From positions 124,001 to 188,000 of the IMG/VR virus record IMGVR_UViG_3300042402_002564: a DNA stretch of 64,000 bases; one strand, 5' to 3'. The position numbers and the translations under genes were made by a program. Position 1 is the stretch's first letter, and the number at the start of each line of letters is the position of its first letter. Shown in pieces: positions 3,819-50,020 of the stretch. Below the pieces are notes generated by a model. It worked only from the letters and a program-made list of their open reading frames with translations. It was not told the origin of the DNA and made no database searches.

Positions 3819-3890
3819 ACGATTGTTAACGGGGGCACGATAGGGTGCCCCCACCCTGTAGAATTTAAAAGTCAACACGGGACACACCCC

Positions 3891-4130: not shown

Positions 4131-4180
4131 TACAATCGGGGGGAGAAATCCCCCCTTCTCAAACCACCTCACCTAGAACC

Positions 4181-4507: not shown

Positions 4508-4549
4508 GTGACACTTATGGGGTGCTGAGTTCTTTATACTTAGCACCCC
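4505..4549. repeat. adjacent palindrome and 12-bp inverted repeat
   Basis: TAAGTG-A-CACTTA (4505-4517); GGGGTGCTGAGT-N7-ACTTAGCACCCC (4519-4549). Confidence 0.8.
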
Positions 4550-25700: not shown

Positions 25701-28700
25701 TCAGATAGTGGTGATTTAACAACAGCATCTTCATATGATCAAATAAATTACTGCGACTTACCTTTAATTAATGATAGTACTAGACTTACTGATATTTTAG
25801 ATATTAGACCAAGGGTATTACCATTTAATCCAGAATCTAGTGTTTCACCATTCGAATTCTTTGGCAGAACTTTTTCAGAAGAGAATAATTCATCAAAAAA
25901 TATAATTGCATCTGATGAATCTATAACTTTAACTTATTCATTCTATTTACCAAGAATAGATAAAATTTATTTGAATAAGAATAGAAGATTCCAATTAATC
26001 AATGGTATTCCTTCAGAGAATCCATTACCACCAATTCCAATTGACGATTCATTGGAAGTTGCAACAATAAATCTTCCACCATATATTTGTAACGCTAATT
26101 CTTTAGATATATCATTAAAACAGCATAAGCGTTATAGAATGCAAGATGTTGCCCAACTTGAAGATAGAATCAAAAACTTAGAATATTACACCGCATTATC
26201 ATTATTAGAAACAAATACAGAAAATTTATTTGTACCTGATGAAAATGGATTATCTAGATTTAAATCTGGAATTTTTGTAGATAATTTTTCAACTAGAAAT
26301 TCTCAAGTAAAAGTAGGTCCAGTAAAAAATAGTATTGACCCAGCAAATCTAGAATTGAGACCTTCACCATTCACAACAGAAATTGATTTACAAATAGGTT
26401 CTAAATCACTTATTGGTATTGGTACTACCGCATCCCCAATTGCAGACACAAAATTTGTAAATGATCTCGTTGGAAATAATGTAAGAAGAACTGGACAATT
26501 AATTACACTGGATTATGATGAAGTAGTTGAAATAAAACAACCCTTTGCGACAAGAGTTGAAAACGTAGTTCCTTACTTAGTAATATCTTATAAAGGAACT
26601 ATTGAATTATTCCCATCTTCTGATATTTGGATAGACCAAGTAAGATTAGAACCACAAAGATTAGAATTAGACCTGTATACAGAGTCTAGAGAAGAATTAA
26701 TACATTCTGGTTTCGATCCACAAACAGGTTTAACTCCAGTAACATGGGATGCTTGGGAAGCTACTTGGACAGGTAGTACTACATCAGTACAAAATTCTGC
26801 AGTATTTGCTGGATCTACTTCTAATCAAATAGGAAGAACTATAACAACAACAAATACTTTCCGAAATATTCAAACAACAACAGTAACTAGAACTGGAACT
26901 GAAACTAGATCTGGTTCTCAATTGAGATTAGCTGAACAAGTTGATGTTGTTAATGAAGGAGATAGAGTTGTTAGCACTTCTGTCATTCCATTCATGAGAT
27001 CTAGGAATGTTGAATTTACTGGAAAATCATTTAGACCTTTTACTAGACTATACACATTTTTTGATGGTGTAGATGTAAATAGATTTGTTTTACCAAAATT
27101 AATTGAAATTGAAATGATCACTGGTAAATTTAATGTTGGTGAGATTATAACTGGTAGAATGTCAACTGGAACTGAAACTGAAATTAATGACTCTACTCCA
27201 TTTATAACTTTTAGAGTTGCAAAATCAAATCATAAGTATGGTCCTATTTCCAATCCTACAGATACATTTACTGTAAGTCCATATAATCAGTCATATACAA
27301 TTCCAGAAGAATATTCTAGTTCTTCAATTCTTCTTAATGTTGATACTGCATCACTATCAGATATAACTCAAGGTTTGTATAGAGGATTCATACAAACAGG
27401 TATGAGATTGAGAGGTGAAGAGGGTGAAGCAGTTATAACAAATGTAAGATTGTTTACAGACCATGTAGGGACTCTTATAGGTTCATTCTTTATTCCAAAC
27501 CCAAATATTATATCAAATCCATCTTTTGAAACTGGAATTAAATTATTTAAATTAACAAGTAGCTCTACAAATAGTTCTGTTGGTGGACTTGTTAGCACAG
27601 ATGGTGAAGAGCAATATTTTGCTCAAGGTACAATTAATAATCAACAAGAAACTATTAGAACTACTAGAAAACCAAGATTTGATGAAGAGACAGTAAGTGA
27701 ATCTAGAGCGGCAGTAGATGTACAATCAACTACTGCAGTAAGTACATTTACAACTGTTAGTACTATTACATTACCGCCACCACCACCACCAGATCCACCA
27801 TGGGGAGGAGACCCACTAGGACAATCATTCTTTATTACTAATAATACTGGAGTTTTTGTAACTGCTGTTGATGTTTTCTTTAATACTAAAGACGAAACAC
27901 TTCCAGTAACAGTTCAGCTTAGACCTGTTGTTAATGGTGTTCCATCTACAGAAGTATATCCATTTGGTGAAGTTGTTGTTGAATCTAAAGATGTTGTTAC
28001 TTCTTCAGACGGTTCATTACCAACTAAAGTATTATTCCCTTCCCCAATTTATTTAAATCCAAATTCAGAAAATGCTATTGTATTATTAGCACAATCATAT
28101 GAATACACTGTTTGGATTTCTAGAATGGGTGAAATTGACATTGGTACTTTATCTCAACCAGAATCTAGACAGGTTCTAGTTTCTGCACAACCAATGCTTG
28201 GTTCTTTATTCAAGTCACAAAATGGTTCCACTTGGACACCTAGCCAATATGAAGATTTAAAATTCAATCTATATTCGGCAAGATTTAAGGGTAGTAATGG
28301 ATCTATAACATTCTATAATCCAGAATTATCAGAAGGTAACGCACAAATTGCAACTCTATTAAAAGATTCTTTAGAATTTAATGCTAAAAAAATTATTGTA
28401 ACTTTAAATGATACTGTAGATTTATCTGGAGTAGATTTGGGTAATACTATTATTCAAATGAATAATAATGCTTTTGCAAATTATGTTGGTGCTGGTGGTT
28501 CTGCTTCTGGAAATTTAAATATTGTTAATCCTGGTATTGGATATACACCATCTAATGGTTCATCGTTTACATTCACTAATATTCCTCTGGTATCTTCTAC
28601 TGGAAATGGTAAAAATGCGACTGCTAATATTACTATTGGAACTGTTAATGGATTAAATGGTGTTGCTATTGCTGCAACAATATCCAATGGAGGTTCTGGT

Positions 28701-30296
28701 TATCAAATTGGCGATGTTCTTACAGTTGAACAAATCGGTTCTGAGTCATTAGGAAGAAATTTACAGTTATCATTATCAAATATTTCTGGAACTAATGAAC
28801 TAATTTTAGATCAAGTTCAAGGTGAATTTAAAATTAATGGGGCAATGCCTATACAATATGTTGATAGTGTTGCTGGAATTACTACAATTTTAACTACTTC
28901 TGGTCCAAATGCAGTAATTACCGATTTAGAACTTTATTCCCTTGAGACAGATGGTTTACATATTAAAGTAAATCATAAAAATCATGGTATGCATTCTGAA
29001 ATTAATAAAGTTCAGATTAATCATGTTGATACTGATATAACACCTACCATATTGACTGCAGACTATACAAATTCTGACACTGGAAGTATCAGTATTGCAA
29101 GTACTACATCTTTCACAACGTTTGAAAATGTTTCGGTTGCTTCCACAAATCCAGGATATGTTTTAATAGATAATGAAATAATTTCATATACTGGAGTTGG
29201 TGATGGACAATTAATAGGTATTACTAGACAAATAGATCAAACTAGATCTTACAACTATCCTACTGGTTCAATAGTTAAAAAATATGAATTGAATGGAGTT
29301 TCATTAAGAAGAATAAACAAAACTCATGATTTACAAGATTCCCTAGTACAAAGACCAATAGGATTAGATTACTATTATATTAAACTTGACACATCATCAA
29401 ATGGAACTGATAGAAATAGTGGAAATGGATTTGAAAAACTATACATTAATGAATCCAAATCTTCTGGTGGCAATTCAGTAAAAGCATCACAAAATATACA
29501 ATATGAAATAGCAAGACCAATAGTTCAAACATTAGTTTTATCTGAAACTAACATTCGTTCATCAATTAAAACTGTAACTGGAACTAGTATTGATGGTGAT
29601 GAAGTATCATTTATTGAATCTGAAATACTTCCATTAAATATAACAGAAAATACATTCTTCGATACTCCAAGAATTGTTGCATCTAAGGTTAATGAAACTG
29701 ATAAATTGTCCAGTTTACCTGGAAATAAATCATTAAGCGTTACATTTAACCTATCTACTTTAAATAATACAGTATCTCCTGTTATTGATTTAGATAGAGT
29801 TGGATTAATTTTAACAACTAATAGAGTAAATAATGTTATTGACGATTACGTAAATGATAGTAGAACATCTTCAATATACGAAGATCCAACAGCTTTCATT
29901 TACACTAATAAGATGATTTCTTTAGAAAATTCTGCATCATCTATTAAAATTTTATTATCTGCTTATGTAAATGTTTTTAGTGAAGTTAGAGCATTTTACA
30001 CCATATCTAATAAATTAGAAACAAATCCAATTTATTATCCATTCCCAGGATATAATAACTTAGATGTAAATGGAAAAGTGATTGATATCTTTAATAGTGA
30101 TGGACTACCTAATAAGTTAGTACCAAAAACAGATATTCTTGGTTTTGGTAATAATGAAGTTACCTTTAGAGATTATGAGTTCTTTATTGATAATTTACCA
30201 GAATTTAGATACTTTGGCATTAAACTAATTGGAACATCTACAAATCAGGCACATCCACCAAGAATAAAAGATTTACGTGTAATTGCATTGGCTTAA
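22788..30296 (+). CDS. large virion structural protein, VrlC/DUF4815-like (2502 aa)
   Basis: NLNVSPYFDDF...VLFKPG.PVQARELT.LQS, APGADRL, RYRMQD...LE.RI.NLEYYT.LSLLE, DPLGQSF, GSLFKSQN..TW. Confidence 0.85.
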   Translation: MPKETNLNVSPYFDDFDPEKQYYQVLFKPGLPVQARELTSLQSVLQNQIEQLGNHLFKEGSVVIPGQINYNNSLFAVEVESEYLGIPFASYASELLGKVIRGENSNVSAKVVLIIGPEFSERGYHTIYINYLSSGTDERQAFANGETLLLEENLVLNNLNFQSGQGFAITAPTDCTSTGSALFLSEGIYFLRGSFVKVDEQVLILEPHANNPSYRVGFEILEEVITSSQDQSLNDNAKGFNNYAAPGADRLKITASLTKKPLDSEKNENFIEFLIVRNGTVSHINETPEYNVIVDELARRTYDQSGDFYVKPFSIVSRESLNDSKGNNGIFNSNQLTYGNLTPNSSLGVYKISPGKAFIKGYEVNVRGVTFLDFEKTRTTKTLENQKINFITGPTLTLNRVFGAPTIGFTTDNTISLRDQRIGVAHSIFAGKEIGVARVYDYALESGSYSSFDQNLNEWDIALYDIQTYTEITLNEPLTLTAPTFIEGKSSGATAYLRYNTTSGIITAYNGQGKFIYGEKLIFNGIEGNRVSTAITAYSIDDVKSLYSLVGSGITFNADVKPQLKLSYGQVRISPKSGAAPGICTVTSNDLVFLNAVKPGDLVSFTNPAINNAQLKTFAKIVSVTDDFNIIISGITTVSNICDGGLPTSQITPVDFSILKSKFQSSSDNTLYTPLPKKWISNVNLTNSNLTIRKEFDVTITANTTNTIQADEDEFFLPFDEERYVLVNSSGYIEPLTPDKFRYTNGNREIRIFGVNSVGSARLIATLEKINIKNKVKNISRVNSIIVNKSNLAQSGIGSTTLNDGLSYGNYGYGLRVQDKELCLLVPDVTKVYGIFESSDTTDPKLPRISLFNLNGPTGRVDDLIIGEEFIGRESGAVGIFVNKVDSLNLEFIYLNELRLKLNETIEFKETSIRGVVNGFVEGDSNITNRYLLDSGQKETICDYSKLIRITNNKEPKRKLRIIFEASQYSSSDSGDLTTASSYDQINYCDLPLINDSTRLTDILDIRPRVLPFNPESSVSPFEFFGRTFSEENNSSKNIIASDESITLTYSFYLPRIDKIYLNKNRRFQLINGIPSENPLPPIPIDDSLEVATINLPPYICNANSLDISLKQHKRYRMQDVAQLEDRIKNLEYYTALSLLETNTENLFVPDENGLSRFKSGIFVDNFSTRNSQVKVGPVKNSIDPANLELRPSPFTTEIDLQIGSKSLIGIGTTASPIADTKFVNDLVGNNVRRTGQLITLDYDEVVEIKQPFATRVENVVPYLVISYKGTIELFPSSDIWIDQVRLEPQRLELDLYTESREELIHSGFDPQTGLTPVTWDAWEATWTGSTTSVQNSAVFAGSTSNQIGRTITTTNTFRNIQTTTVTRTGTETRSGSQLRLAEQVDVVNEGDRVVSTSVIPFMRSRNVEFTGKSFRPFTRLYTFFDGVDVNRFVLPKLIEIEMITGKFNVGEIITGRMSTGTETEINDSTPFITFRVAKSNHKYGPISNPTDTFTVSPYNQSYTIPEEYSSSSILLNVDTASLSDITQGLYRGFIQTGMRLRGEEGEAVITNVRLFTDHVGTLIGSFFIPNPNIISNPSFETGIKLFKLTSSSTNSSVGGLVSTDGEEQYFAQGTINNQQETIRTTRKPRFDEETVSESRAAVDVQSTTAVSTFTTVSTITLPPPPPPDPPWGGDPLGQSFFITNNTGVFVTAVDVFFNTKDETLPVTVQLRPVVNGVPSTEVYPFGEVVVESKDVVTSSDGSLPTKVLFPSPIYLNPNSENAIVLLAQSYEYTVWISRMGEIDIGTLSQPESRQVLVSAQPMLGSLFKSQNGSTWTPSQYEDLKFNLYSARFKGSNGSITFYNPELSEGNAQIATLLKDSLEFNAKKIIVTLNDTVDLSGVDLGNTIIQMNNNAFANYVGAGGSASGNLNIVNPGIGYTPSNGSSFTFTNIPLVSSTGNGKNATANITIGTVNGLNGVAIAATISNGGSGYQIGDVLTVEQIGSESLGRNLQLSLSNISGTNELILDQVQGEFKINGAMPIQYVDSVAGITTILTTSGPNAVITDLELYSLETDGLHIKVNHKNHGMHSEINKVQINHVDTDITPTILTADYTNSDTGSISIASTTSFTTFENVSVASTNPGYVLIDNEIISYTGVGDGQLIGITRQIDQTRSYNYPTGSIVKKYELNGVSLRRINKTHDLQDSLVQRPIGLDYYYIKLDTSSNGTDRNSGNGFEKLYINESKSSGGNSVKASQNIQYEIARPIVQTLVLSETNIRSSIKTVTGTSIDGDEVSFIESEILPLNITENTFFDTPRIVASKVNETDKLSSLPGNKSLSVTFNLSTLNNTVSPVIDLDRVGLILTTNRVNNVIDDYVNDSRTSSIYEDPTAFIYTNKMISLENSASSIKILLSAYVNVFSEVRAFYTISNKLETNPIYYPFPGYNNLDVNGKVIDIFNSDGLPNKLVPKTDILGFGNNEVTFRDYEFFIDNLPEFRYFGIKLIGTSTNQAHPPRIKDLRVIALA

Positions 30297-33954: not shown

Positions 33955-34392
33955 ATGGCAGAAAAATTTACCGATTTAGAGAGTGCTTTTGATGTAGAGA
34001 CTGAAATTATTCAGACAGAAAATACATTAAAAGAAATAAAAAACATTGCAAAAGAAGTTGCAGAATTAAATAATGATGTTAGAAAAGATTATGAATATAC
34101 CAGAGGTAATCTATATTCCATTATAGAAAAGGGTCAAGAAGCATTAAATAGTGCATTAGAATTAGCACAAGATGGTGGACAACCCAGAGCTTATGAGGTT
34201 GTTGGGCAATTAATAAAAAATGTCTCAGATGCTACTGATAAATTATTAGATTTGCAGAAAAAATTAAAAGATATTGAAGATAATGGTCAGGTAAAATCCC
34301 AAACCAATGTTACTAACAATGCTCTTTTTATTGGTTCTACTGCAGAATTATCTAAATTCTTAAAATCTAACAAAAAAAGTGAAAATACTTAA
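33955..34392 (+). CDS. gp16: terminase small subunit gp16
   Basis: DYEYTR..L, PRAYEV, NNALFIGSTAEL. Confidence 0.93.
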   Translation: MAEKFTDLESAFDVETEIIQTENTLKEIKNIAKEVAELNNDVRKDYEYTRGNLYSIIEKGQEALNSALELAQDGGQPRAYEVVGQLIKNVSDATDKLLDLQKKLKDIEDNGQVKSQTNVTNNALFIGSTAELSKFLKSNKKSENT

Positions 34393-34397: not shown

Positions 34398-34405
34398 TAT
34401 AAATA
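34398..34405 (+). promoter_or_regulatory. late promoter
   Basis: Exact T4 late consensus TATAAATA, intergenic. Confidence 0.8.
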
Positions 34406-34426: not shown

Positions 34427-36172
34427 ATGAAAAGAATATCCGAAGATCATAAAGAAATTGCAAGTGGTAAAAGAAAAGATGATGAAGGATATATGGCTCG
34501 CAATGAAATGGATGCTATCGAAAGATCTGTTAATAAGTTAAGAAAAGTAATAAAAAAGAGTGACACTCAACTTCCTGCTTGGGTTCAATCTAAAATCACT
34601 AAAGCAGCAGATTATATTGATACTGCAGCAGAATATCTTCAAAGTGATGAAGAATTAGATGAAAATTCCATTAGTTTTACCGTAGATCCCAAAAAACTTA
34701 GATCAGATGCAAGATCTGCAAAAATAAGAACTCTTGCTCAAAAAGGTTCTACTGAAGGTGAAAGACAAGCAGCAGAAAGAAAAACAAAGGGTCCAAAATT
34801 ATTTGGTGAAGATATTTCTTTGGTTGAAAAAATTCTAGGTGAAGAAAAATGTGGTAAGGGAATGTATTGGTGCAATACTGATAAAGTATGCAAACCCATA
34901 CCAAAAGGATTTAATGTTGATGGGCAAAAGAAAAAACCAACAGAAGTTGGAATCGGCAAACCTGTTGGAGAAGAGAAATCTTGTAACCACACCAAAAAAG
35001 GAACTTATTGCCCCATTCATGGTAAAAATGATTGTTCTTTAAAAGAAGAAAAAGATCCTAGAGGTCCAGTAAAATCATATAAATCACCTCAAGAAATTGC
35101 TAAAAAACATGGTGTATCTTTAGAGGCAATTAAAAAACAATTAGAAATGGGTCTTGAAGTGGAAAAAGAACATACTTCAAGTAAAACTGCGGCAAGAATC
35201 ACTGCATTGCAACATTTGGATGAACTTCCAGATTATTATACAAAGTTAAAAAAGGTGGAAAAAAAATCCATCAAAAATGAAAGTGTAACCGTTGAAGATA
35301 TGTTTGGTAATACATTTGTTGAATTTATAGATTTGATTACACCGCAAGATGTTATTGATGAGAAAAAAATTCCTGTTACTCGTCAGGCAGGAGACTTTAG
35401 ATATTCTGGAAAGACTGGGGAAGAAAAAGCAACAAATAAAGCAAAACGATTAAGTCAATCACAAAACCCTGCTGATCGTAAAAGAGCAAATAAAATCAGT
35501 AAAACTATAAAAACAGTTGCTGATCGTGATACTGCACAAGCAAGTTCTGATGCAAGGCAGGAACTTTATAGAAGACAACAAAGAAGAGCAAATGATCTTG
35601 CTAAACAGTTAAATCAACAAAAAAACAAGGTAGATGAAGCAGTAAGACTACCATCCCAAAATGGTCAATTAATGATGATTATTTTTACCTGGAGAGGCAA
35701 ATCATATTCATTAAAAATGTTCTTTCCACAAGTAAAAATGCCATCTAGAAAGGAAGTGGAATTCGAACTCCAAAAAGTATATCCTGGAGCAAGAGTTTTA
35801 CAATCTCATGTAACAGATTTACGTCAAGATGGAGCACCAGTTTTACAAATACAAAATTCTAAATCAAAAAATTATTTACTAAATAATGGAACTATTGGTG
35901 AAGAGTTAGAAGAAGATTGGCAAAAAGTCAATCGTCAAGATAAGACTGATGGATTAAGTAAAAAAGCAGTAAAAGCATATCGCAAAGAAAATCCAGGTTC
36001 TAAACTACAAACTGCTGTAACTGAAAAAAATCCAGAAGGAAAAAGAGCAGAACGCCGTAAATCCTTTTGTAGTCGAATGAAAGGGATGAAGTCAAAATTA
36101 ACTTCTTCAGATACCGCAAAAGATCCAGATAGCAATATTAATAAAGCACTAAGACGTTGGAACTGTAATTAA
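34427..36172 (+). CDS. modular basic protein, probable prohead-packaged internal (poly)protein
   Basis: Late promoter; short modules (LPAWVQSKIT, two Cys/His clusters, MG..VE.EHT...HL.E.PDYYTKL, RRKSFC.RM...RRWNC) separated by [ILV]xE sites. Confidence 0.7.
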   Translation: MKRISEDHKEIASGKRKDDEGYMARNEMDAIERSVNKLRKVIKKSDTQLPAWVQSKITKAADYIDTAAEYLQSDEELDENSISFTVDPKKLRSDARSAKIRTLAQKGSTEGERQAAERKTKGPKLFGEDISLVEKILGEEKCGKGMYWCNTDKVCKPIPKGFNVDGQKKKPTEVGIGKPVGEEKSCNHTKKGTYCPIHGKNDCSLKEEKDPRGPVKSYKSPQEIAKKHGVSLEAIKKQLEMGLEVEKEHTSSKTAARITALQHLDELPDYYTKLKKVEKKSIKNESVTVEDMFGNTFVEFIDLITPQDVIDEKKIPVTRQAGDFRYSGKTGEEKATNKAKRLSQSQNPADRKRANKISKTIKTVADRDTAQASSDARQELYRRQQRRANDLAKQLNQQKNKVDEAVRLPSQNGQLMMIIFTWRGKSYSLKMFFPQVKMPSRKEVEFELQKVYPGARVLQSHVTDLRQDGAPVLQIQNSKSKNYLLNNGTIGEELEEDWQKVNRQDKTDGLSKKAVKAYRKENPGSKLQTAVTEKNPEGKRAERRKSFCSRMKGMKSKLTSSDTAKDPDSNINKALRRWNCN

Positions 36173-36186: not shown

Positions 36187-37833
36187 ATGGCCGAACATTA
36201 TCTTGGCAATCCTCTTCTAAAGAAAGCAAATACTGCTATTCAATTTACAGAAGAACAAATAATAGAATTTGCTCGTTGTCAAGACGATCCTATTTACTTT
36301 GCGAAAAATTATATACAAATTGTCACCTTGGACTATGGTTTGCAACCATTTAAACCATATCCATTTCAGGAGACTATGATTGAAAGATTTCATAATTACA
36401 GATTTAATGTATGTAAACTACCAAGGCAGTCTGGAAAATCTACAATTGTAGTATCGTATCTTTTACACTATGCAATTTTTAATGACAATGTAAACATAGC
36501 AATTCTTGCTAACAAGGCATCTACTGCTAAAGACCTTTTAGACCGCCTACAAACTGCATACGAGAACCTTCCCAAGTGGTTACAGCAAGGTGTAATGACT
36601 TGGAACAAAGCATCACTGGAGTTAGAAAATGGTTCAAAAATTATTGCTGCTTCTACTTCTGCCTCTGCGGTACGCGGTGGCTCTTATAATATTATATTCC
36701 TGGACGAATTTGCGTTTATTCCTAACCACATTGCTGATCAGTTTTTCAGTTCTGTTTATCCTACTATTTCATCTGGTAAAAATACAAAAGTAATTATCGT
36801 TTCTACCCCTCACGGGATGAACCATTTTTATAAAATTTGGCATGATGCTGAACGTAAAAAAAATGAATATATTCCAACAGAAGTACACTGGAGTGAAGTT
36901 CCAGGTAGAGATGAAAAATGGAAAGAGCAAACTATTGCAAATACTAGTGAACAGCAGTTTAAAGTTGAGTTTGAATGTGAATTTTTAGGATCTGTTGATA
37001 CATTAATTTCTCCAAATAAGCTTAGAAATTTAGTTTACGAATCTCCAAGACTAAGAAGTGGTGGTTTAGATGTTTTTGAAGATTGTAAAGATGAACATAA
37101 TTATGTAATGTCTGTTGACGTTGCTAGAGGTGTCGGTAATGATTATTCTGCATTTGTTGTAATAGACATCACACAATTTCCACATAAGGTAGTTGCAAAG
37201 TATAGAGATAACCAAATAAAACCAATGCTATTTCCAAGTATAGTACACGAAGTAGCAAAGAGTTATAATGATGCCTATGTATTGTGTGAAGTTAATGATG
37301 TTGGTGATCAGGTAGCATCAATTCTTCACTATGATTTGGAGTATCAAAATGTTTTAATGTGCTCTATGCGTGGTAGAGCTGGACAAATTGTTGGACAAGG
37401 ATTTTCTGGCAAGAAGACTCAACTTGGAGTTAAAATGTCTAAAACTGTTAAAAAGGTTGGATGTCTTAACTTAAAAACAATGATAGAAGAGGATAAACTA
37501 TATTTTAATGATTATGATATTATTAGTGAATTAACAACATTTATTCAAAAGTCAAATTCTTTTGAAGCAGAAGATGGATGTAATGATGATTTGGCTATGT
37601 GTTTAGTAATATACGCTTGGTTAGTTGTACAAGATTATTTTAAAGAATTGACAGACCAAGATGTAAGAAAGAAATTATACGAAGAACAAAAAAATCAAAT
37701 AGAACAAGATATGGCACCATTTGGATTTATTGTAGATGGTATTAATAATCAATCATCTTTTGTCGATAATACTGGAGATAGATGGTATACGGACGAATAT
37801 GGTGATATGTCTTACATGTGGGACTATATGTAA
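36187..37833 (+). CDS. gp17: terminase large subunit gp17
   Basis: YLGNP.LK, PRQSGKST Walker A, IIFLDEFAF Walker B, VDVARG..DYS, DDLAM. Confidence 0.97.
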   Translation: MAEHYLGNPLLKKANTAIQFTEEQIIEFARCQDDPIYFAKNYIQIVTLDYGLQPFKPYPFQETMIERFHNYRFNVCKLPRQSGKSTIVVSYLLHYAIFNDNVNIAILANKASTAKDLLDRLQTAYENLPKWLQQGVMTWNKASLELENGSKIIAASTSASAVRGGSYNIIFLDEFAFIPNHIADQFFSSVYPTISSGKNTKVIIVSTPHGMNHFYKIWHDAERKKNEYIPTEVHWSEVPGRDEKWKEQTIANTSEQQFKVEFECEFLGSVDTLISPNKLRNLVYESPRLRSGGLDVFEDCKDEHNYVMSVDVARGVGNDYSAFVVIDITQFPHKVVAKYRDNQIKPMLFPSIVHEVAKSYNDAYVLCEVNDVGDQVASILHYDLEYQNVLMCSMRGRAGQIVGQGFSGKKTQLGVKMSKTVKKVGCLNLKTMIEEDKLYFNDYDIISELTTFIQKSNSFEAEDGCNDDLAMCLVIYAWLVVQDYFKELTDQDVRKKLYEEQKNQIEQDMAPFGFIVDGINNQSSFVDNTGDRWYTDEYGDMSYMWDYM

Positions 37834-41327: not shown

Positions 41328-42995
41328 ATGGCAAAATTATTTGGATTTTCTATAGAGAATAAAGAATCTCTTTCACCTTCTGTAGTATCCCCCGTTCCTC
41401 AAAATAATGAGGACGGGGTTGATCATTATCTAACAAGTGGTTTTTTTGGATCTTATGTAGATATAGAGGGTGTTTATAGAACCGAATATGATTTAATTAA
41501 AAGATACAGAGAAATGTCACTTCACCCAGAAGTAGACAGTGCTATTGAAGATATCGTTAATGAAGCTATTGTTAGTGACACAAACGATACTCCAGTACAA
41601 ATTGAATTATCTAATTTAAATGCTAGTGATGGATTAAAAAAGAAGATAAGAGAAGAATTTAAAACAATTTTAGATTTATTAGATTTTGATAAAAAATCTC
41701 ATGAAATTTATAGGAATTGGTACATTGATGGAAGACTTTATTATCATAAAGTAATCGATTTAAAAAATCCACAAAAGGGTATTCAAGAATTAAGATATGT
41801 TGACGCATTAAAAATGCGTTATGTTAGACAATCTATTTCTAAAAAGAAGAATAATGGTGGAGTTAGAATAAAAAATTCTAACGACGAAAATCCAATGGAT
41901 TATGATTTTCCACAAATTGAAGAATACTTCATCTATAATCCTACTGCCCAATCTCCAATTGGGTCTATGAATGGAAGAAATTCTAGTCAGGCAAATTCTG
42001 GAATCAAAATTGCGAGAGATGCGATAACTTATTGTACTTCTGGATTAGTAGATAGAAATAAAGGAACTTGTCTGTCATACTTACATAAAGCAATTAAGTC
42101 TCTCAATCAACTCCGCATGATTGAGGATAGTCTTGTTATTTACAGATTGTCTCGTGCTCCAGAGCGTCGTATCTTCTATATTGATGTAGGTAATCTTCCT
42201 AAAATTAAGGCAGAGCAATATCTTCGTGATGTTATGATGCGTTATCGCAATAAATTAGTTTACGATGCCTCTACAGGTGAAATTAGAGATGATAAGAAGT
42301 TTATGAGTATGCTTGAGGACTTCTGGTTACCTCGTAGAGAAGGTGGTAGAGGTACAGAGATTACAACTCTTCCTGGTGGTCAGAATCTTGGAGAAATTAC
42401 AGATATCAAATATTTCCAGAGTAAATTATACAAATCATTGAACGTTCCTCCATCAAGAATGGAAGGAGAAGGTGGATTTAATCTTGGTAGATCTTCAGAA
42501 ATTTTGAGAGATGAACTCAAATTTACCAAATTTGTTGGTAGATTAAGGAAGCGTTTTTCAAACATGTTTAATGACATGTTAAAGACCCAATTAATATTAA
42601 AAAATATCGTAACTCCAGAAGATTGGGAGCAAATGAGTGAGCATATTCAATATGACTTCCTTTATGATAATCACTTCTCTGAACTAAAAGAAGCAGAATT
42701 GATGACCGAAAGGTTAAATATTGCTGCTACTGCAGAACCTTATATCGGCAAATACTACTCTCAAGATTATGTAAGACGTAAGATTTTACGTCAAACTGAT
42801 GAAGAGATTATTGAGCAAGATCAATTAATCAAAAAAGAAATTAAAGCAGGCATTATTCCAGATCCAAATGCACCAATAGACCCAGCAACTGGTATGCCAA
42901 TGCCTTCTGATGCAAACCAAGATAATATTAATGGTGCATCAGGAAAAGTTCCTACAGAACCAGGGATAGATGGTTCAAGTACAGAAGTTAAGTAA
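41328..42995 (+). CDS. gp20: portal vertex protein gp20
   Basis: RAPERRIFYIDVGNLP, EDFWLPRREGGRGTEITTLPGG. Confidence 0.98.
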   Translation: MAKLFGFSIENKESLSPSVVSPVPQNNEDGVDHYLTSGFFGSYVDIEGVYRTEYDLIKRYREMSLHPEVDSAIEDIVNEAIVSDTNDTPVQIELSNLNASDGLKKKIREEFKTILDLLDFDKKSHEIYRNWYIDGRLYYHKVIDLKNPQKGIQELRYVDALKMRYVRQSISKKKNNGGVRIKNSNDENPMDYDFPQIEEYFIYNPTAQSPIGSMNGRNSSQANSGIKIARDAITYCTSGLVDRNKGTCLSYLHKAIKSLNQLRMIEDSLVIYRLSRAPERRIFYIDVGNLPKIKAEQYLRDVMMRYRNKLVYDASTGEIRDDKKFMSMLEDFWLPRREGGRGTEITTLPGGQNLGEITDIKYFQSKLYKSLNVPPSRMEGEGGFNLGRSSEILRDELKFTKFVGRLRKRFSNMFNDMLKTQLILKNIVTPEDWEQMSEHIQYDFLYDNHFSELKEAELMTERLNIAATAEPYIGKYYSQDYVRRKILRQTDEEIIEQDQLIKKEIKAGIIPDPNAPIDPATGMPMPSDANQDNINGASGKVPTEPGIDGSSTEVK

Positions 42996-44781
42996 CTTTA
43001 ATAAATTTATTTTTTAGAAGTCCTTTTCTTCTCAGTATAAAAAGATTATTTTTATCATATCCTATAAAGTCATTATCGATTTTATAGGATATTTTATTTT
43101 TCTCCCAAGTTTCTATATTATATTTTGAGTTTAAAGTTAATGGATATTTTTGATTTTCATTAAAAATAAATTTTTTCTGAATATCAATAATTTCTGAGTC
43201 AATTTGTACAATATTTGAGCAATATAACTCAATAAATTCAAATAGTTTTGATTTATTTTTAAATAAGAATTCAAAACTACTAGCATGTAAAGAATGACCA
43301 GTTTTGGCACCCTGTGTTATCTTCCCAGTCTTAATATAAGTAGAGACAATATTATATATTTCTTGATAATGAACTCCAATGAATCCATCATCATTTTTTA
43401 TACAGTCAAATAAATTATCATAAAATTTTCTATAACTTATATTTAAAATATTAAAGCAATATTTCGATAGCACTTGAGTATATCCCGCTATATGTAATTG
43501 AACAATCAACCATCCGTACATATAACATTCAATTAATTCATCTGTGGTTAAAGTATCGGTTTTATTAATTAATTCTATACTTTCTTTTACTTCTGAGTAA
43601 TCTTTTTCATTAGTGAATGAAACGTAATCCTCTGCTTTGATAGTTTCAATACCATATATTTTTCTAGATAATTCACTGTTCAATTCACTGTTACCAAAAA
43701 CTTGACAAAACCAAACATCAATAGATTCATGTTGCCCAAATTCTAATATTTTAGAGAATCCTTCCTTCCAAGAATCTATAGTTTCGTTTGGTAATCCTAA
43801 AATTAACTCGGTATAAGTTTTTACATCATGCTCTTTACTTTTTTCAATATGAGATGTAATGTTATTAATACTCATATTTTTTCTTTTAATTGCTTTAAGT
43901 GTTGGTTCATTCATACTTTGAACACTTATAGTTACACCTCTACTAATATCTCCAAGTATTTTTGCTATTTCAAAAACTACTTCTGTAGAATTTTTAGAAT
44001 ATTGCAAATTAACAGATTCTAATTTGCTATTATCAGCAACTTCTCTTATTAATTTTGCTATTTCCAAATCTCTTTCTTTATACATTCCAAAATTTGCATC
44101 TGCACAAAATATAAATGCAACATTATTATTTTTAATCCATTCAAGATCATTTTTTACACGATCTAGATTAAACATTTTAACTTTACTATAGGTTAATCCA
44201 CCCCAATCACAAAAAGTACATGAATGGGGGCACCCTCGATTAGTTTCAATAGTAGAAGCCCAAAGAGTATTTGGATTGTCTTTTACAATTTGATCAAATA
44301 CTTTAGATTCATATGGACTTGGAAAGTCTAATTGCTCTATTCTACTTTTTTGATATATTTTTTCTATTGTTTTATTTTGAACAATACTAGTTAATAAATC
44401 TAAGTAACTTTCTTCACCTTCACCAATTATTACACAATCTATAAATTCATTATCAAGAATTTTCAAAGTTGCTTGTGGTCCACCAAATTGAATAATACAG
44501 TCTGGAAATTTTTCTTTTATTAGTTTTGATAAAAATAGACAATATTGCTCATTCCAAACGTAACAACTAAAACTGCACACTGTTGGATTGTCTAATCTTT
44601 CCAGTATTTTATTTGGATGCTCTCTTTTAAAGATAATATCTTTTAATACAAAATTATTTTTTACTTCATCAAATTGATTACAATAACTCCATAAACAACC
44701 AACACTGTAAGGAAGCCAATATGTGTCTTCATTTCTAATTTCTACAGAATATTGCGGTTGAAATAAATATATATTTTTCAT
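42988..44781 (-). CDS. cobalamin-binding-domain radical SAM enzyme (paralog 2)
   Basis: N-terminal B12-binding-like region (FSCYVWN, GGPQ, GEGE); ETNRGCPHSCTFCDW CxxxCxxC; DANFG; TELILGLP.ET. Confidence 0.9.
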   Translation of the reverse strand: MKNIYLFQPQYSVEIRNEDTYWLPYSVGCLWSYCNQFDEVKNNFVLKDIIFKREHPNKILERLDNPTVCSFSCYVWNEQYCLFLSKLIKEKFPDCIIQFGGPQATLKILDNEFIDCVIIGEGEESYLDLLTSIVQNKTIEKIYQKSRIEQLDFPSPYESKVFDQIVKDNPNTLWASTIETNRGCPHSCTFCDWGGLTYSKVKMFNLDRVKNDLEWIKNNNVAFIFCADANFGMYKERDLEIAKLIREVADNSKLESVNLQYSKNSTEVVFEIAKILGDISRGVTISVQSMNEPTLKAIKRKNMSINNITSHIEKSKEHDVKTYTELILGLPNETIDSWKEGFSKILEFGQHESIDVWFCQVFGNSELNSELSRKIYGIETIKAEDYVSFTNEKDYSEVKESIELINKTDTLTTDELIECYMYGWLIVQLHIAGYTQVLSKYCFNILNISYRKFYDNLFDCIKNDDGFIGVHYQEIYNIVSTYIKTGKITQGAKTGHSLHASSFEFLFKNKSKLFEFIELYCSNIVQIDSEIIDIQKKFIFNENQKYPLTLNSKYNIETWEKNKISYKIDNDFIGYDKNNLFILRRKGLLKNKFIKVT

Positions 44782-46586
44782 TCATCAATTTTAGATATAG
44801 TATTTTTTAGTAATCCCTTTCTTCTTAAAACCCAAAAATCATTTCGTATTGACTCATCTCTTTTATTTGAAACCATTAAACTTGTTGGTTTATCTTCCCA
44901 TGTTGTTGTATCAACAGAAGAAGAAATAGTAATAGGATAATCTACCTCAGAGTCATAAACAAAGTTTTTTTGAAGATCCCAAAATTCATTAGTTATACCA
45001 CCAAATTTTACCAGAGATTTATCAATTAAGGCAAATACTTCATTCCTATTATTCATAAAAAATGAAAAATCATTAGGAGAATTAAATTCTAATGAATGTC
45101 CACTTTTATTATCTGGTAAAATTCCCTCTGTTAAGTAATTTTTTACATCGAACTTTAATTTTTGAAAATATTCACCAATTATTCCGTTGTCAGTTTGAAC
45201 CTTTTCAAATATTTCATCATAAAACATCCTATAAGTTATATTTTTATTGTAAAAAAGATATTTTGCTATTAGTTGAGCATATCCATTTATATGGAATTGT
45301 ATTACTGTCCAAGCATACAAATAACTTTCAATTAATTCCAAAGTTGCCATTGAATTAGTTTTATTAACTATCTCAACAATTTCTTTGAATCCATGATATT
45401 CCTTAGGATTAGTGAATGAAATATAGTCATACGCCTTTACTGTTTCAATTCCGTGCATCTTTCTAGATAATTCACTTCCCAATTCACTATTACCAAATAA
45501 TTGGCAGAACCAAACATCAATCGATTCGTGTTGACCACACTCCAAAACTTTAGATAATCCGTCTTTCCAAGTTTCTAAAGTTTCCTCGGGTAATGGCAAA
45601 ATCAGTTCAGTGTATGTTTTAACTCCATATTCTTGACTCATTCTCATATGATTAGTCAAATCATTTATATGAAGATTCTTTCTCTTAATAGCCTTCAAAG
45701 TTGGTTGATTCATACTTTGAACGCTAATTGTTATTCCCCTAAGACAATGTTCTTCAAGTATTTTTGCAATTTTAAATACTGCTTCTGTTGAATTCTTAGC
45801 AAATTGTAAAACAACGTCACCAACATTGGTTTCTTTTAATTTGTCTCTGATTATCTCTGCTATAAGTATATCTCGCTCCTTATACATTCCAAAATTAGCA
45901 TCAGCAACAAATAAGTATCCAATATTATTATTTTTTATCCAAGTAATATCATCTTCAACTCTCTTTATGTCGAAGTGGTCTACTTTACTCATAGTAGTTC
46001 CACCCCAATCACAAAAAGTGCATCTATGAGGACAACCTCTATTTGTTTCTATAGTTGCAGCCCAAATTACATCGGGATTTTCTTCAATTATTTTACTAAA
46101 GACATTAGATTGATATGGACTTGGATAATCTAATGTAGATAATCTAGTTCTCTCGTAATATTTTTTTATTTCTTTGTTTTCTATAATAGAATTAAGTATG
46201 TCTAGAAAATTTTCTTCACCCTCAGAAATTATTACAGTATCAATAAAATCATTTTCCTCTTGCATTTTTTTAGATGCTTGAGGTCCACCAAATTCGATAA
46301 TGCAATTTGGAAATTTTTCTTTTACGAGTTTAGCTATTCCTAGACAATACTGTTCATTCCAAATATAACAACTAAATCCACATAAAACAGGATTATCCAA
46401 TCTTTCTAATATTTTATCTGGATGTTCTCTTTTAAAAATTATATCCTTTAAAATAAAATTATTTTTTACTTCATCAAATTGATTACAATAACTCCAAATA
46501 CATCCAACACTATATGGTATCCAATAATTTTCTTGTTTTCTAACTTCTACAGAATATTGTGGTTGAAATAAATATATGTTTTTCAT
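44778..46586 (-). CDS. cobalamin-binding-domain radical SAM enzyme (paralog 1)
   Basis: Same architecture with RGCPHRCTFCDW; start set at 46586 because MKNIYLFQPQYSVE aligns with the paralog start. Confidence 0.9.
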   Translation of the reverse strand: MKNIYLFQPQYSVEVRKQENYWIPYSVGCIWSYCNQFDEVKNNFILKDIIFKREHPDKILERLDNPVLCGFSCYIWNEQYCLGIAKLVKEKFPNCIIEFGGPQASKKMQEENDFIDTVIISEGEENFLDILNSIIENKEIKKYYERTRLSTLDYPSPYQSNVFSKIIEENPDVIWAATIETNRGCPHRCTFCDWGGTTMSKVDHFDIKRVEDDITWIKNNNIGYLFVADANFGMYKERDILIAEIIRDKLKETNVGDVVLQFAKNSTEAVFKIAKILEEHCLRGITISVQSMNQPTLKAIKRKNLHINDLTNHMRMSQEYGVKTYTELILPLPEETLETWKDGLSKVLECGQHESIDVWFCQLFGNSELGSELSRKMHGIETVKAYDYISFTNPKEYHGFKEIVEIVNKTNSMATLELIESYLYAWTVIQFHINGYAQLIAKYLFYNKNITYRMFYDEIFEKVQTDNGIIGEYFQKLKFDVKNYLTEGILPDNKSGHSLEFNSPNDFSFFMNNRNEVFALIDKSLVKFGGITNEFWDLQKNFVYDSEVDYPITISSSVDTTTWEDKPTSLMVSNKRDESIRNDFWVLRRKGLLKNTISKIDE

Positions 46587-46609
46587 TTCATTGAACTTTA
46601 TGTATGTTG

Positions 46610-46624
46610 TATTTATCATAAATA
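46610..46624. promoter_or_regulatory. back-to-back divergent late promoters
   Basis: TATTTAT-C-ATAAATA: ATAAATA on both strands, each about 24 nt from the ATG it faces (46586 on -, 46648 on +). Confidence 0.75.
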
Positions 46625-46807: not shown

Positions 46808-47128
46808 ATGAAATCATTCAAGCAATTTATATCTGAATCAGTTAATATTGCTGGTGATTTTACTGGAAATCTTTATATTAATTCCGAAACAGAACAACCT
46901 CAGCAAGTAGGAGAAAACTATGTTGCTGATGTTATGTGGCAAGGAAACTTGTATAGATTGGAATTAGTAACCAAATCTGGATTGCCCTCAAAACAGGATT
47001 TAGGTGAGCAACTTCAAAGACAATATCCTGGAGCAATTGTTCATCAGATTTATCCAGCAGAAGAAAAGAACTTTAACATTAAAAACGTACAAAGATATCA
47101 CCCCTCAAAATTAGAATGGATTGATTGA
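46808..47128 (+). CDS. probable internal head protein with a capsid-targeting-like N-terminus
   Basis: MKSFKQFISE resembles the T4 IPII/IPIII capsid targeting sequence MKTYQEFIAE. Confidence 0.7.
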   Translation: MKSFKQFISESVNIAGDFTGNLYINSETEQPQQVGENYVADVMWQGNLYRLELVTKSGLPSKQDLGEQLQRQYPGAIVHQIYPAEEKNFNIKNVQRYHPSKLEWID

Positions 47129-47130
47129 TA

Positions 47131-49369: not shown

Positions 49370-50020
49370 ATGAAACTTATCAGAGAAGAAATCGAAAAGG
49401 TAGAACTTATCACCGAAGATGTTGGTGGTAAAAAACAAATGTATATCCAAGGTGTATTCCTCCAAAGCGAAACAGTTAATCGTAATGGTAGAATGTATCC
49501 TTTTTCGATTATGGAAAGAGAAGTAAATCGTTATAATGAAAATTATGTTAAAAAAGGTAGGGCATTAGGAGAACTTGGTCATCCAGATGGTCCTACAGTA
49601 AATCTCGATAGAGTTTCTCATAAAATTACTGAATTAAAGCAAAGTGGTAATAATTTTGTAGGTAAGGCACAAATCTTATCAACTCCAATGGGAAAAATTG
49701 CAGCATCTCTTCTTAAGGATGGTGTAACTCTTGGTGTTTCATCCCGTGGTATTGGTTCATTAAGAGAGAACAATAAAGGATATAAAGAAGTTGGTGAAGA
49801 CTTCATGCTTGCAACTGCGGCTGATATTGTTGCTGATCCTTCTGCTCCTGATGCTTTTGTTCAAGGCATTATGGAAGGTAAAGAATGGATTTGGGACGGT
49901 GGCATTCTCCGTGAAAAACTCGCTGAAAATACCAAAAGAAAAATTAATAATTTAGTCGATCAAAGAAGACTAGAAGAGAATAAAATTGAGTTATTTAATG
50001 AATTTTTGAATTCATTATAA
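49370..50020 (+). CDS. gp21: prohead core protease gp21
   Basis: NRNGRMYP, ALGELGHP, GVSSRG.GS, DIVADPSAPDA. Confidence 0.97.
   Translation: MKLIREEIEKVELITEDVGGKKQMYIQGVFLQSETVNRNGRMYPFSIMEREVNRYNENYVKKGRALGELGHPDGPTVNLDRVSHKITELKQSGNNFVGKAQILSTPMGKIAASLLKDGVTLGVSSRGIGSLRENNKGYKEVGEDFMLATAADIVADPSAPDAFVQGIMEGKEWIWDGGILREKLAENTKRKINNLVDQRRLEENKIELFNEFLNSL

What the first reader, a model, noticed from the sequence alone, without database searches (positions are those of the whole stretch)
34427..36172. Probable protease-processed internal polyprotein between the terminase genes
Seen: basic mini-domains are separated by [ILV]xE motifs (RISE|D, ELDE|N, ILGEE|K, VGEE|K, LKEE|K, VIDE|K, KVDE|A, ELEE|D). 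They include two Cys/His clusters (CGKGMYWCNTDKVC; CNH...CPIH...C). Established: T4 gp21 cleaves after Glu in [IL]xE motifs, and internal proteins are injected with the DNA (IPI* inhibits a restriction enzyme). Inference: one late gene yields a cocktail of small packaged and injected effectors.
Basis: partly seen in the sequence, partly recalled or inferred. Interest (0 to 1): 0.7.

Follow-up and report, generated by a model that had tools for sequence, protein, structure and literature searches.

The report
Cyanophage packaged polyprotein, likely protease-cut
A late gene between the two terminase genes of a marine T4-like cyanophage encodes a string of small shuffled protein modules joined by sequences that match the cutting site of the phage's head protease, so it is probably loaded into the capsid and cut into small internal proteins, although no cutting has been shown.

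Summary
ORF 34427..36172 (581 aa, 65.9 kDa, pI 9.6) lies between TerS and TerL, and all eight listed motifs and both Cys/His clusters are present. In this one sequence the count of [ILV]xE is not above chance (12 vs 7.7±2.5, p≈0.07); the signal is in where the motifs sit. Eleven of 12 fall in low-confidence linkers of a beads-on-a-string model. In 275 homologues with shuffled module order, [ILV]xE directly precedes the beta-domain in 59 of 75 unrelated upstream contexts and the N-terminal helical module in 31 of 43 (background 1.8% per position). N-terminal copies of several modules lack it.

The gene is a member of T4-GC119 (C-terminal DUF6321), which was detected by mass spectrometry in S-SM1, S-SCSM1 and S-CREM2 virions. 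The phage encodes a gp21 protease, its gp23 has an LxE site where T4 gp23 is cut, and the gene has a TATAAATA late promoter. Four small ORFs carry T4-type capsid-targeting leaders; one is a paralogue of a module of this protein. Some GC119 members (P-SSM7_194) start MKTYSQFIEE.

The processed-polyprotein reading is well supported but indirect. This protein has no canonical targeting leader, and injection or effector function is untested.

The parts
34398..34405 (+). TATAAATA, the T4-type late promoter consensus, 21 nt upstream of the ATG
   Evidence: only 2 copies in the 64-kb window against 11.7 expected. The other copy is at 49061, upstream of the gp21 cluster. NATAAATA also precedes gp18, gp20 and gp22.
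34427..36172 (+). CDS of the 581-aa modular protein (P0001), a member of the cyanomyovirus T4-GC119 / DUF6321 family
34427..34444 (+). aa 1-6, leader MKRISE ending in an [IL]xE
   Evidence: Conserved in 25/26 aligned homologues. It occurs as M[IL]xE or MxxLxE in N-terminal copies, and as unrelated-sequence+[ILV]xE in internal copies.
34445..34663 (+). aa 7-79, helical module (DHKEIASG...YLQSDE), ending in LDE79
   Evidence: phrog_32745; helices 21-44 and 51-72. It is found at internal positions 100-340 in other family members.
34664..34843 (+). aa 80-139, variable linker plus the conserved element SLVEKILGE ending at E139
   Evidence: Indel-rich in alignment. E139 is invariant.
34844..35047 (+). 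aa 140-207, two Cys/His clusters (C142, C149, C155; C186, H188, C195, H198, C203), probably metal-binding knuckles
   Evidence: C142, C186, C195, H198 and C203 are invariant in 44 homologues. phrog_32143 matches aa 165-204. Metal binding is inferred, not tested.
35048..35362 (+). aa 208-312, DUF5661 helical domain (aa 221-280) plus a short beta hairpin (ESVTVEDMFGNTFVEF)
   Evidence: PF18905 E = 7.7e-16; pLDDT about 80-87.
35363..35638 (+). aa 313-404, very basic (net +13) helical variable segment, ending in VDE404
   Evidence: It is replaced by unrelated sequence in homologues. E404 is invariant in 44/44.
35639..35914 (+). aa 405-496, small beta-alpha-beta domain plus a linker ending in LEE496
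   Evidence: pLDDT about 90 in the domain model. It is homologous to the stand-alone 106-aa ORF at 46808 (BLASTP E = 4e-6). It is preceded by [ILV]xE in 59/75 distinct contexts.
35915..36169 (+). aa 497-581, DUF6321: a basic (net +13) helical domain with conserved W and two Cys
   Evidence: PF19846 E = 3.4e-13; helical model. It is a stand-alone 84-94 aa protein next to capsid genes in podoviruses.
33955..34392 (+). gp16, small terminase subunit
   Evidence: PF11053; phrog_445 E = 5e-51.
36187..37833 (+). gp17, large terminase subunit
   Evidence: PF03237, PF17289, phrog_2.
46808..47128 (+). 106-aa ORF with a T4-type capsid-targeting leader (MKSFKQFISE) and a body paralogous to aa 409-461 of P0001
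   Evidence: It matches phrog_1742 at full length and occurs in 135 cyanophage records. In S-SCSM1 and DSL-LC02 it lies directly downstream of the GC119 gene.
49370..50020 (+). gp21 prohead protease (Peptidase_S77), the proposed processing enzyme
   Evidence: PF03420 E = 2.6e-41; 38% identical to T4 gp21. A late promoter copy lies at 49061-49068.
51368..52777 (+). gp23 major capsid protein. LME (aa 54-56) aligns with the T4 gp23 maturation site LTE|A.

Best explanation
The gene encodes a late-expressed, beads-on-a-string protein of the cyanomyovirus T4-GC119 family. My preferred mechanism has four steps. First, it is made with the head proteins from its own T4-type late promoter. Second, it is incorporated into the prohead. 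Third, the gp21 protease cuts it after Glu at the [ILV]xE sequences that sit at the module junctions. The best candidates are E6, E79, E139, E207, E404 and E492/E496. Fourth, this releases pieces of roughly 7-12 kDa: a helical module, Cys/His knuckles, DUF5661, a basic helical segment, a small beta domain and DUF6321. These pieces would stay with the packaged DNA as internal head proteins.

Shown: the motif positions, junction-specific conservation across shuffled architectures, the late promoter, the presence of gp21, T4-type targeting leaders in this phage and on family members, and virion association of homologues.

Inferred: entry into the prohead, the cleavage itself, the fate of the pieces, and any ejection into or action on the host.
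For: (1) Junction statistics were taken on 275 family members with shuffled module order. [ILV]xE sits at P3-P1 directly before the beta domain in 59/75 distinct upstream contexts, before the helical module in 31/43, and before DUF6321 in 30/78. The background rate is 1.8% per position.

(2) The logo shows information at P1 and P3 but near-background at P2, P4 and beyond. For the beta domain the values are 2.77, 0.96, 1.83 and 0.40. This is the T4 gp21 L/I-x-E signature described in PMC9026906.

(3) The motif belongs to junctions, not to modules. N-terminal copies of the GWSDKYK and CKxGYYYC modules lack it, as does the beta domain of P-HM2_112 (M|ATRIPT). Stand-alone podovirus DUF6321 proteins lack it too. 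Internal copies have it.

(4) Eleven of 12 motifs in P0001 fall in low-pLDDT linkers (p = 0.0026).

(5) gp21 is encoded in the window, and gp23 has LME|T where T4 gp23 has LTE|A.

(6) The genome has four ORFs with T4-type targeting leaders: MKTFQQFIAE, MKSFKQFISE, MKSFSQFLNE and MKTLQDFLSE. T4 IPII and IPIII start MKTYQEFIAE. One of the four is a paralogue of the P0001 beta domain.

(7) GC119 members themselves carry such leaders. P-SSM7_194 starts MKTYSQFIEE, and 16 of its 120 listed relatives match a strict pattern. Leader-like 9- or 10-mers also occur internally, directly before module starts: 8 observed against 0.9 expected.

(8) Homologues were detected in virions: S-SM1 with 13 peptide counts, S-SCSM1 ORF29, and S-CREM2 ORF137 with 4 peptides covering only 4.1% of the protein.

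(9) TATAAATA lies 21 nt upstream of the ATG. It is one of two copies in the window; the other precedes the gp21 cluster.
Against: No direct evidence of cleavage exists for any family member.

P0001 has no canonical capsid-targeting leader; it starts MKRISE, and the positions equivalent to T4 residues 4 and 7 are absent. How it would enter the prohead is therefore unknown, and T4 gp21 acts only inside proheads.

The motif count in this single protein is not significant (p = 0.07).

Conservation alone can mislead. LDE266 is conserved in 41/41 homologues but lies inside the DUF5661 fold. The [IL]xE before the helical module is kept even in N-terminal copies, so there it could simply be part of the module.

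The junction before DUF6321 is weaker, with P3 often M, F, T or Q, and the ESVTVED hairpin has no motif in 0/29 contexts.

Syn9 virion proteomics did not detect its GC119 protein.

In several phages the neighbours in the gp16-gp17 slot are tail-fibre-like proteins.
Confidence: 0.55

Rival explanations
1. The protein is an uncut multi-domain virion protein. Under this reading the [ILV]xE at junctions is a structural or linker feature (for example a hydrophobic anchor plus a helix-capping Glu at the start of each module), or it was inherited with the modules. The protein would function full-length as a flexible, basic, DNA- or capsid-binding string.
For: No cleavage has been shown, and P0001 lacks a targeting leader. 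[IL]xE is retained before the helical module even when that module is N-terminal. LDE266 shows that the tripeptide can be conserved for structural reasons. The count is not enriched in this sequence.
Against: At least six unrelated module types share the same tripeptide pattern at their N-terminal edge. N-terminal and stand-alone copies of several modules lack it. The P2 and P4 positions are unconstrained. The motif matches the specificity of a protease encoded in the same genome. T4-type targeting leaders occur on family members and at internal junctions.
Confidence: 0.22
2. The protein is a prohead core or scaffold accessory that gp21 degrades, as T4 gp22 and gp67 are. Most fragments would leave the head during maturation and only one or a few small pieces would remain. 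Cutting would then serve disposal, not the production of a set of delivered proteins.
For: T4 gp22 and gp67 are cut at many L/I-x-E sites, and only 2.5-3.9 kDa fragments stay in the head (PMC9026906). S-CREM2 ORF137 was detected with 4 unique peptides covering only 4.1% of the protein. Syn9 virions gave no peptides. The gene is not universal; S-PM2 lacks it.
Against: The modules are conserved, foldable small domains (pLDDT up to about 90). They are also encoded as stand-alone leader-bearing proteins, which fits retained internal proteins better than disposable scaffold. S-SM1 gave 13 peptide counts. K/R-rich sequence alone can explain low tryptic coverage.
Confidence: 0.15
3. The protein is a tail-, neck- or fibre-associated virion protein, outside the capsid and never exposed to gp21.
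For: In S-SM2, S-SCSM1 and P-TIM68 the gp16-gp17 slot also holds tail-fibre-like genes. The proteomics papers show presence in virions but not location.
Against: Family members carry T4-type capsid-targeting leaders. In podoviruses DUF6321 sits beside major capsid protein genes. There are no fibre-like repeats or beta-helix. The protein is disordered and basic.
Confidence: 0.06

Closest known systems
T4 internal proteins IPI, IPII and IPIII, with their capsid-targeting sequence and gp21 processing
   Same: They are small proteins, made late and loaded into the prohead by an N-terminal leader (MKTYQEFIAE) that gp21 removes after L/I-x-E. This phage has near-identical leaders on four small ORFs, and relatives of this protein carry them. 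A gp21 homologue is present.
   Different: T4 IPs are single-module proteins from separate genes. Here six or more modules are strung in one 581-aa chain, with the cut motif at internal junctions, and this chain has no canonical leader. No sequence similarity to IPI-III was found.
T4 prohead core proteins gp22, gp67 and Alt, which are cut by gp21 at several sites
   Same: A head-internal protein is cut after Glu at multiple short L/I-x-E sites (PMC9026906).
   Different: gp22 and gp67 are scaffold that is degraded and expelled. The modules here are conserved, independently mobile small domains.
Processed inner-body and ejection proteins of giant phages (phiKZ, 201phi2-1, SPN3US)
   Same: Many head proteins are cut after Glu at a three-residue motif by a gp21-like protease. 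Propeptide regions carry redundant sites. A comparable run of three motifs (ITE, LVE, LSE) occurs in the leader MKKITETSKLNISLVETILSE of some family members.
   Different: Their motif is S/A-x-E and the protein families are unrelated. They are not built from shuffled mini-modules.
Polyvalent proteins of phages and conjugative elements (Iyer, Burroughs, Anand, de Souza, Aravind 2017; PMC5512222)
   Same: These are multi-domain proteins encoded among late or virion genes with highly variable domain order. They are proposed to be packaged, delivered with the DNA and cut into functional units.
   Different: Polyvalent proteins carry recognisable enzymatic or anti-restriction domains and usually their own metallopeptidase. 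This protein has neither: no peptidase and no known effector domain. Processing would be done in trans by the head protease.
T4-GC119, a cyanomyovirus 'structural protein' cluster (Sullivan et al. 2010; PMC3037559)
   Same: This is the same family: C-terminal DUF6321, usually in the gp16-gp17 slot, with sizes of 276-2985 nt across 15 of 16 cyanophages. It was detected in S-SM1 virions.
   Different: That work gave no function, domain dissection, motif or processing proposal.

Membership tests
T4-GC119 / DUF6321-containing cyanomyovirus virion proteins | DUF6321 domain at the C-terminus | tested here: met
   PF19846 E = 3.4e-13, 50.5 bits against a cutoff of 28.5, aa 504-578. The C-terminal part also matches phrog_30733, phrog_11180 and phrog_4689.
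T4-GC119 / DUF6321-containing cyanomyovirus virion proteins | Gene located in the gp16-gp17 hypervariable slot of a T4-like cyanophage | tested here: met
   The arrangement is the same in S-SM2 (SSM2_109, labelled GC119), S-SM1, P-HM2, DSL-LC02 and S-CREM2.
T4-GC119 / DUF6321-containing cyanomyovirus virion proteins | Protein present in purified virions | not testable with these tools
   Known only for homologues: S-SM1 (13 counts), S-SCSM1 ORF29 and S-CREM2 ORF137. It was not detected in Syn9.
T4-type internal proteins (capsid-targeted, gp21-processed) | N-terminal capsid-targeting sequence of the MKTYQEFIAE type | tested here: not met
   P0001 starts MKRISEDHKE. The feature is met by its module paralogue at 46808 (MKSFKQFISE), by three other ORFs of the genome, and by GC119 members such as P-SSM7_194.
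T4-type internal proteins (capsid-targeted, gp21-processed) | L/I-x-E cleavage motif at accessible positions | tested here: met
   Of the 12 [ILV]xE motifs, 11 fall in low-pLDDT linkers. E139 and E404 are invariant.
T4-type internal proteins (capsid-targeted, gp21-processed) | gp21-family prohead protease encoded by the phage | tested here: met
   Peptidase_S77 E = 2.6e-41 at 49370..50020; 38% identity to T4 gp21.
T4-type internal proteins (capsid-targeted, gp21-processed) | Actual cleavage in the prohead, and ejection with the DNA | not testable with these tools
   This needs proteomics or biochemistry.
T4-type internal proteins (capsid-targeted, gp21-processed) | Sequence homology to IPI, IPII or IPIII bodies | tested here: not met
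   No Pfam or PHROG family of T4 internal proteins appeared among the hits.
Polyvalent proteins (PMC5512222) | Many domains in one polypeptide, variable order, late or virion gene context | tested here: met
Polyvalent proteins (PMC5512222) | Recognised effector domains (methylases, ARTs, nucleases, MuF, ArdA and the like) and/or an embedded processing peptidase | tested here: not met
   Pfam gives only DUF5661 and DUF6321. There are no significant PDB sequence or fold matches. Homologues add only DUF192 and DUF3008.

The most novel reading that the evidence does not exclude
Marine T4-like cyanophages may use the T4 capsid-targeting and gp21 system as a general loading-and-release device. Under this reading any small module can be recombined into a GC119 polyprotein, because a three-residue [ILV]xE adaptor at each junction ensures it is freed inside the head. 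The result would be an evolvable, combinatorial set of small proteins delivered to the host with the DNA, functionally comparable to polyvalent proteins or polymorphic toxins but processed in trans by the head protease. With thousands of variants in ocean metagenomes (6745 clusters at 50% identity), this would be one of the most diversified candidate sets of phage-delivered proteins in the sea.
Probability: 0.3. Interest if true: 0.8.

Novelty: new variant of a known kind. Interest (0 to 1): 0.62.

Why it matters
T4-like cyanophages are among the most abundant viruses in the ocean. The gp16-gp17 'hypervariable' slot and its GC119 virion protein have been catalogued for 15 years without a function. 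If the junction motif is a real gp21 site, three things follow:
- It explains why this gene is such an extreme mosaic.
- It extends the T4 internal-protein and targeting-leader system, so far described in the coliphage-type T4 relatives, to cyanophages.
- It defines a large, testable set of small proteins that enter Prochlorococcus or Synechococcus cells with the phage DNA.

It would also offer a natural design rule (leader plus [ILV]xE linker) for packaging cargo into cyanophage capsids in laboratory strains. I found no paper in the searchable library that describes any of this.

Tried and rejected
- Simple enrichment of [ILV]xE in P0001 against shuffles was not significant (12 vs 7.7 ± 2.5, p = 0.07). 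I dropped it as an argument.
- Function by similarity led nowhere. Pfam gives only two DUFs and all PHROGs hits are 'unknown function'. A PDB profile search gave only E≈0.03 matches to ribosomal protein S4, which I attribute to basic composition.
- Fold searches also led nowhere. Foldseek of the full model against PDB found nothing below E = 1. VIA-align of the aa 398-581 model gave a best Z of 5.0, below the noise level the tool states. BFVD returned only family members. Weak hits to small phage inhibitors (p56, T7 Gp2, AcrIC9) and to small virion-vertex chains (phicrAss001, P74-26) were not significant, so I do not use them.
- I rejected a canonical targeting leader on P0001 itself (MKRISE is too short).
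- I rejected a cut site before the ESVTVED hairpin (0/29 contexts) and at VIDE312 (conserved in 3/31).
- The supplement of the S-SCSM1 paper that is held as text had no peptide-level table for this ORF (no match to 'unique peptides' or 'coverage'). I listed the S-CREM2 supplement file but did not search it. Fragment mapping from published data was therefore not possible.
- Rfam and tRNA scans of the GC-rich first 8 kb found nothing.
- I did not run a gp21-substrate complex prediction. A transient enzyme-peptide contact is unlikely to pass, and a failure would say nothing.
Full report
**What is there**

The window is part of a complete 246,502-bp virus record with direct terminal repeats (window = bases 124001-188000). 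Its gene order is that of a T4-like cyanomyovirus: gp13/14 neck, gp15, gp16, gp17, gp18, gp19, gp20, gp21, gp22, gp23. GC content is about 30%, and the nearest cultured relatives are Synechococcus and Prochlorococcus myoviruses.

The finding's coordinates are exactly one ORF, 34427..36172 on the + strand (581 aa, 65.9 kDa, pI 9.56). It lies between the small terminase gene (33955..34392) and the large terminase gene (36187..37833).

**Checking the observation**

All eight motif strings and both Cys/His clusters are present at the positions implied.

The raw count of [ILV]xE is 12. Composition-preserving shuffles give 7.7 ± 2.5 (p = 0.07), so the count alone shows nothing.

'Basic mini-domains' is only partly right. 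Two of the predicted pieces are acidic.

**Anatomy**

Pfam recognises DUF5661 (aa 221-280) and DUF6321 (aa 504-578). PHROGs adds an N-terminal helical module (aa 3-77) and a Cys-rich piece (aa 165-204), all of unknown function.

AlphaFold2 with 44 homologues gives mean pLDDT 55.9 and pTM 0.21, which is a string of small confident units separated by low-confidence linkers. A second model of aa 398-581 gives a beta-alpha-beta domain at pLDDT about 90, a disordered linker, and a helical DUF6321.

Eleven of the 12 motif Glu residues lie in low-confidence segments, against 26 of all 48 Glu (p = 0.0026). The exception, LDE266, is inside DUF5661.

**Family**

The protein belongs to the cyanophage gene cluster that Sullivan et al. 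(2010) called T4-GC119. S-SM2's homologue carries that label. The cluster is present in 15 of 16 cyanomyoviruses, at sizes from 276 to 2985 nt.

The family is very large: tblastn finds it in 507 phage records, and an exhaustive phmmer search finds 6745 clusters at 50% identity.

Homologues are extreme mosaics. The same mini-modules occur in different orders and combinations, together with others such as DUF192, DUF3008, the CW.GY loop, LH.WFKGS, GWSDKYK and KDACYHKV.

For each module I located its start in 275 family members. I kept one instance per distinct upstream context (less than 40% identity over positions -17 to -4) and examined the three residues before the module.

| Module | [ILV]xE at P3-P1 | Glu at P1 |
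|---|---|---|
| Beta domain | 59/75 | 65/75 |
| Helical module | 31/43 | 42/43 |
| DUF6321 | 30/78 | 52/78 |
| ESVTVED hairpin | 0/29 | 0/29 |

The background rate is 1.8% per position.

For the beta domain, information content is 2.77, 0.96, 1.83 and 0.40 at P1, P2, P3 and P4. This is the pattern expected for the T4 gp21 site L/I-x-E, with cleavage after Glu and often before Ala (PMC9026906).

Other module types show the same pattern, with the motif one to four residues upstream.

The motif goes with junctions, not with modules:
- N-terminal copies start directly (MS-WSDKYK, MK-CKPGYYYC).
- P-HM2_112 starts M-ATRIPT, which is the beta domain itself.
- Podovirus DUF6321 proteins are stand-alone, 84-94 aa, with no leader.
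- Internal copies carry VKE, VDE or ILGE.

Per-site conservation in P0001's closest 44 relatives:

| Site | [ILV]xE conserved | Note |
|---|---|---|
| E6 | 25/26 | |
| E79 | 25/26 | |
| E139 | 41/41 | |
| E404 | 44/44 | P2 variable |
| E207 | 41/43 | only if Met is allowed at P3 |
| E492 / E496 | about half | |
| E134 | 27/44 | not conserved |
| E312 | 3/31 | not conserved |

**Is the machinery present?**

A Peptidase_S77 gene lies at 49370..50020 (E = 2.6e-41; 38% identical to T4 gp21). The phage's gp23 has LME|T exactly where T4 gp23 has its maturation site LTE|A.

The T4 late-promoter consensus TATAAATA occurs only twice in 64 kb, against 11.7 expected. One copy is 21 nt upstream of this ORF and the other is upstream of the gp21 cluster. 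NATAAATA also precedes gp18, gp20 and gp22. The gene is therefore a late gene, probably expressed together with the prohead genes.

**A link to T4 internal proteins**

T4 IPII and IPIII begin MKTYQEFIAE, as I translated from the T4 record. This is the capsid-targeting sequence that gp21 removes.

The genome here has four ORFs with such leaders:
- MKTFQQFIAE (8/10 identical to T4)
- MKSFKQFISE
- MKSFSQFLNE
- MKTLQDFLSE

The second is a 106-aa ORF in the window (46808..47128). It matches phrog_1742 at full length and occurs in 135 cyanophage records. Its body is homologous to aa 409-461 of P0001 (E = 4e-6). In S-SCSM1 and DSL-LC02 it lies immediately downstream of the GC119 gene.

The third matches part of the virion 'cytidyltransferase' family GC190.

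GC119 members themselves can carry the leader. P-SSM7_194 starts MKTYSQFIEE, and among its 120 listed relatives 16 fit a strict leader pattern and more fit loosely. One of them starts MKTYTEFVAE.

Leader-like 9- or 10-mers also occur inside longer family members, directly before module starts. Examples are KSFAKFMAE|ASAAWQRK and KSFEQFME|DWQKVN. I found 8 against 0.9 expected. This looks like the scar of fusing leader-bearing small genes.

**Virion association**

GC119 was detected in S-SM1 virions with 13 peptide counts. It was not detected in Syn9, and S-PM2 lacks the gene.

S-SCSM1 ORF29 is one of 45 virion proteins found by mass spectrometry.

In S-CREM2, ORF137 gave 4 unique peptides covering only 4.1% of the protein. 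Its upstream neighbour ORF136, which starts MQTFSMFFSE, gave 8 peptides at 24% coverage.

None of these studies looked for processing.

**Interpretation**

The protein is a late, capsid-destined polyprotein cut by gp21 at junction [ILV]xE sites into pieces of about 7-12 kDa.

Not shown:
- Entry into the prohead. P0001's own N-terminus, MKRISE, is not a canonical leader.
- Cleavage itself.
- Retention versus expulsion of the pieces.
- Ejection into the host.
- Any effect on the host.

No module resembles a known effector, anti-defence protein or enzyme.

The two most basic pieces (aa 313-404 and DUF6321, each net +13) would suit DNA association inside the head. This is inference. DUF6321's position beside capsid genes in podoviruses without a gp21-type protease fits a head-internal role that does not itself require processing.

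**Rivals**

- An uncut string whose junction tripeptide is structural.
- A disposable core component degraded like T4 gp22 or gp67.
- A tail-associated protein.

The first rival is weakened by the junction-specific distribution and by the leaders on family members. The second is a variant of the processing model that current data cannot exclude; the low S-CREM2 coverage fits it. The third has little support.

**Novelty**

The parts are known: the T4 targeting leader, gp21 specificity, GC119 as a 'structural protein', and the concept of polyvalent proteins. Their combination is not described in the searchable literature. That combination is a trans-processed, shuffled polyprotein of internal-protein-like modules in cyanomyoviruses, together with T4-type leaders on cyanophage proteins. 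I rate it a new variant of a known kind, resting on indirect but mutually consistent computational evidence.

Noticed in passing
window 46808..47128; also G000 116697-116897, 192188-192370 and 211324-211914 (outside the window): Four small ORFs carry T4-type capsid-targeting leaders (MKSFKQFISE, MKTLQDFLSE, MKTFQQFIAE, MKSFSQFLNE). The 66-aa one is Cys-rich with a borderline HIPIP match (PF01355, 22.9 bits against a cutoff of 22). The 196-aa one matches part of the virion 'cytidyltransferase' family phrog_395. They are candidate internal head proteins of a cyanophage.
   Followed up: partly
window 46808..49050, compared with L003 (S-SCSM1) and L001 (DSL-LC02): In S-SCSM1 and DSL-LC02 the GC119 gene, the 106-aa leader-bearing gene and a 'MAQWN...' virion protein form one cassette between gp16 and gp17. 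Here the last two sit between gp20 and gp21 instead, so the cassette is split. The 641-aa MAQWN protein (47125..49050) contains an exact 27-aa tandem repeat (VSISNTSFYILNPVTSVTVGGTVSIANT).
   Followed up: partly
window 42988..46619, minus strand: Two tandem paralogous radical-SAM genes (597 and 613 aa, one with a B12-binding domain) are inserted on the opposite strand between the portal gene gp20 and the head-gene cluster.
   Followed up: no
window 34398, 49061 and the NATAAATA sites: TATAAATA is strongly depleted (2 copies against 11.7 expected) and ATAAATA likewise (18 against 44). The + strand copies lie just upstream of structural genes (the 2502-aa protein, GC119, gp18, gp20, the gp21 cluster, gp22). 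This is consistent with their use as late promoters and avoidance elsewhere.
   Followed up: partly
window 1..5000: GC content is 42-49% against about 30% for the rest. There are no ORFs longer than about 220 aa, no tRNA and no Rfam match. The only nucleotide similarity is to hypothetical-protein regions of other cyanomyoviruses. This is unexplained.
   Followed up: partly
window 22788..30296: A 2502-aa ORF lies upstream of the neck genes, in the size range of the giant cyanophage structural proteins (GC400/402 type) detected in S-SM1 and Syn9 virions.
   Followed up: no
L012 (P-SCSP1d), L013 (HTVC115P), L014 (Skadi-3): DUF6321 exists as a stand-alone, extremely basic protein of 84-94 aa. In Prochlorococcus phage P-SCSP1d and Pelagibacter phage HTVC115P it is encoded right after the major capsid protein gene; in Skadi-3 it lies among small hypothetical genes. 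This suggests a small head-associated protein shared across phage morphotypes.
   Followed up: partly
window 50088..51314 (gp22): The scaffold protein carries a long acidic low-complexity N-terminal extension (runs of E/D, aa ~100-160) ahead of the T4_CASP domain.
   Followed up: no
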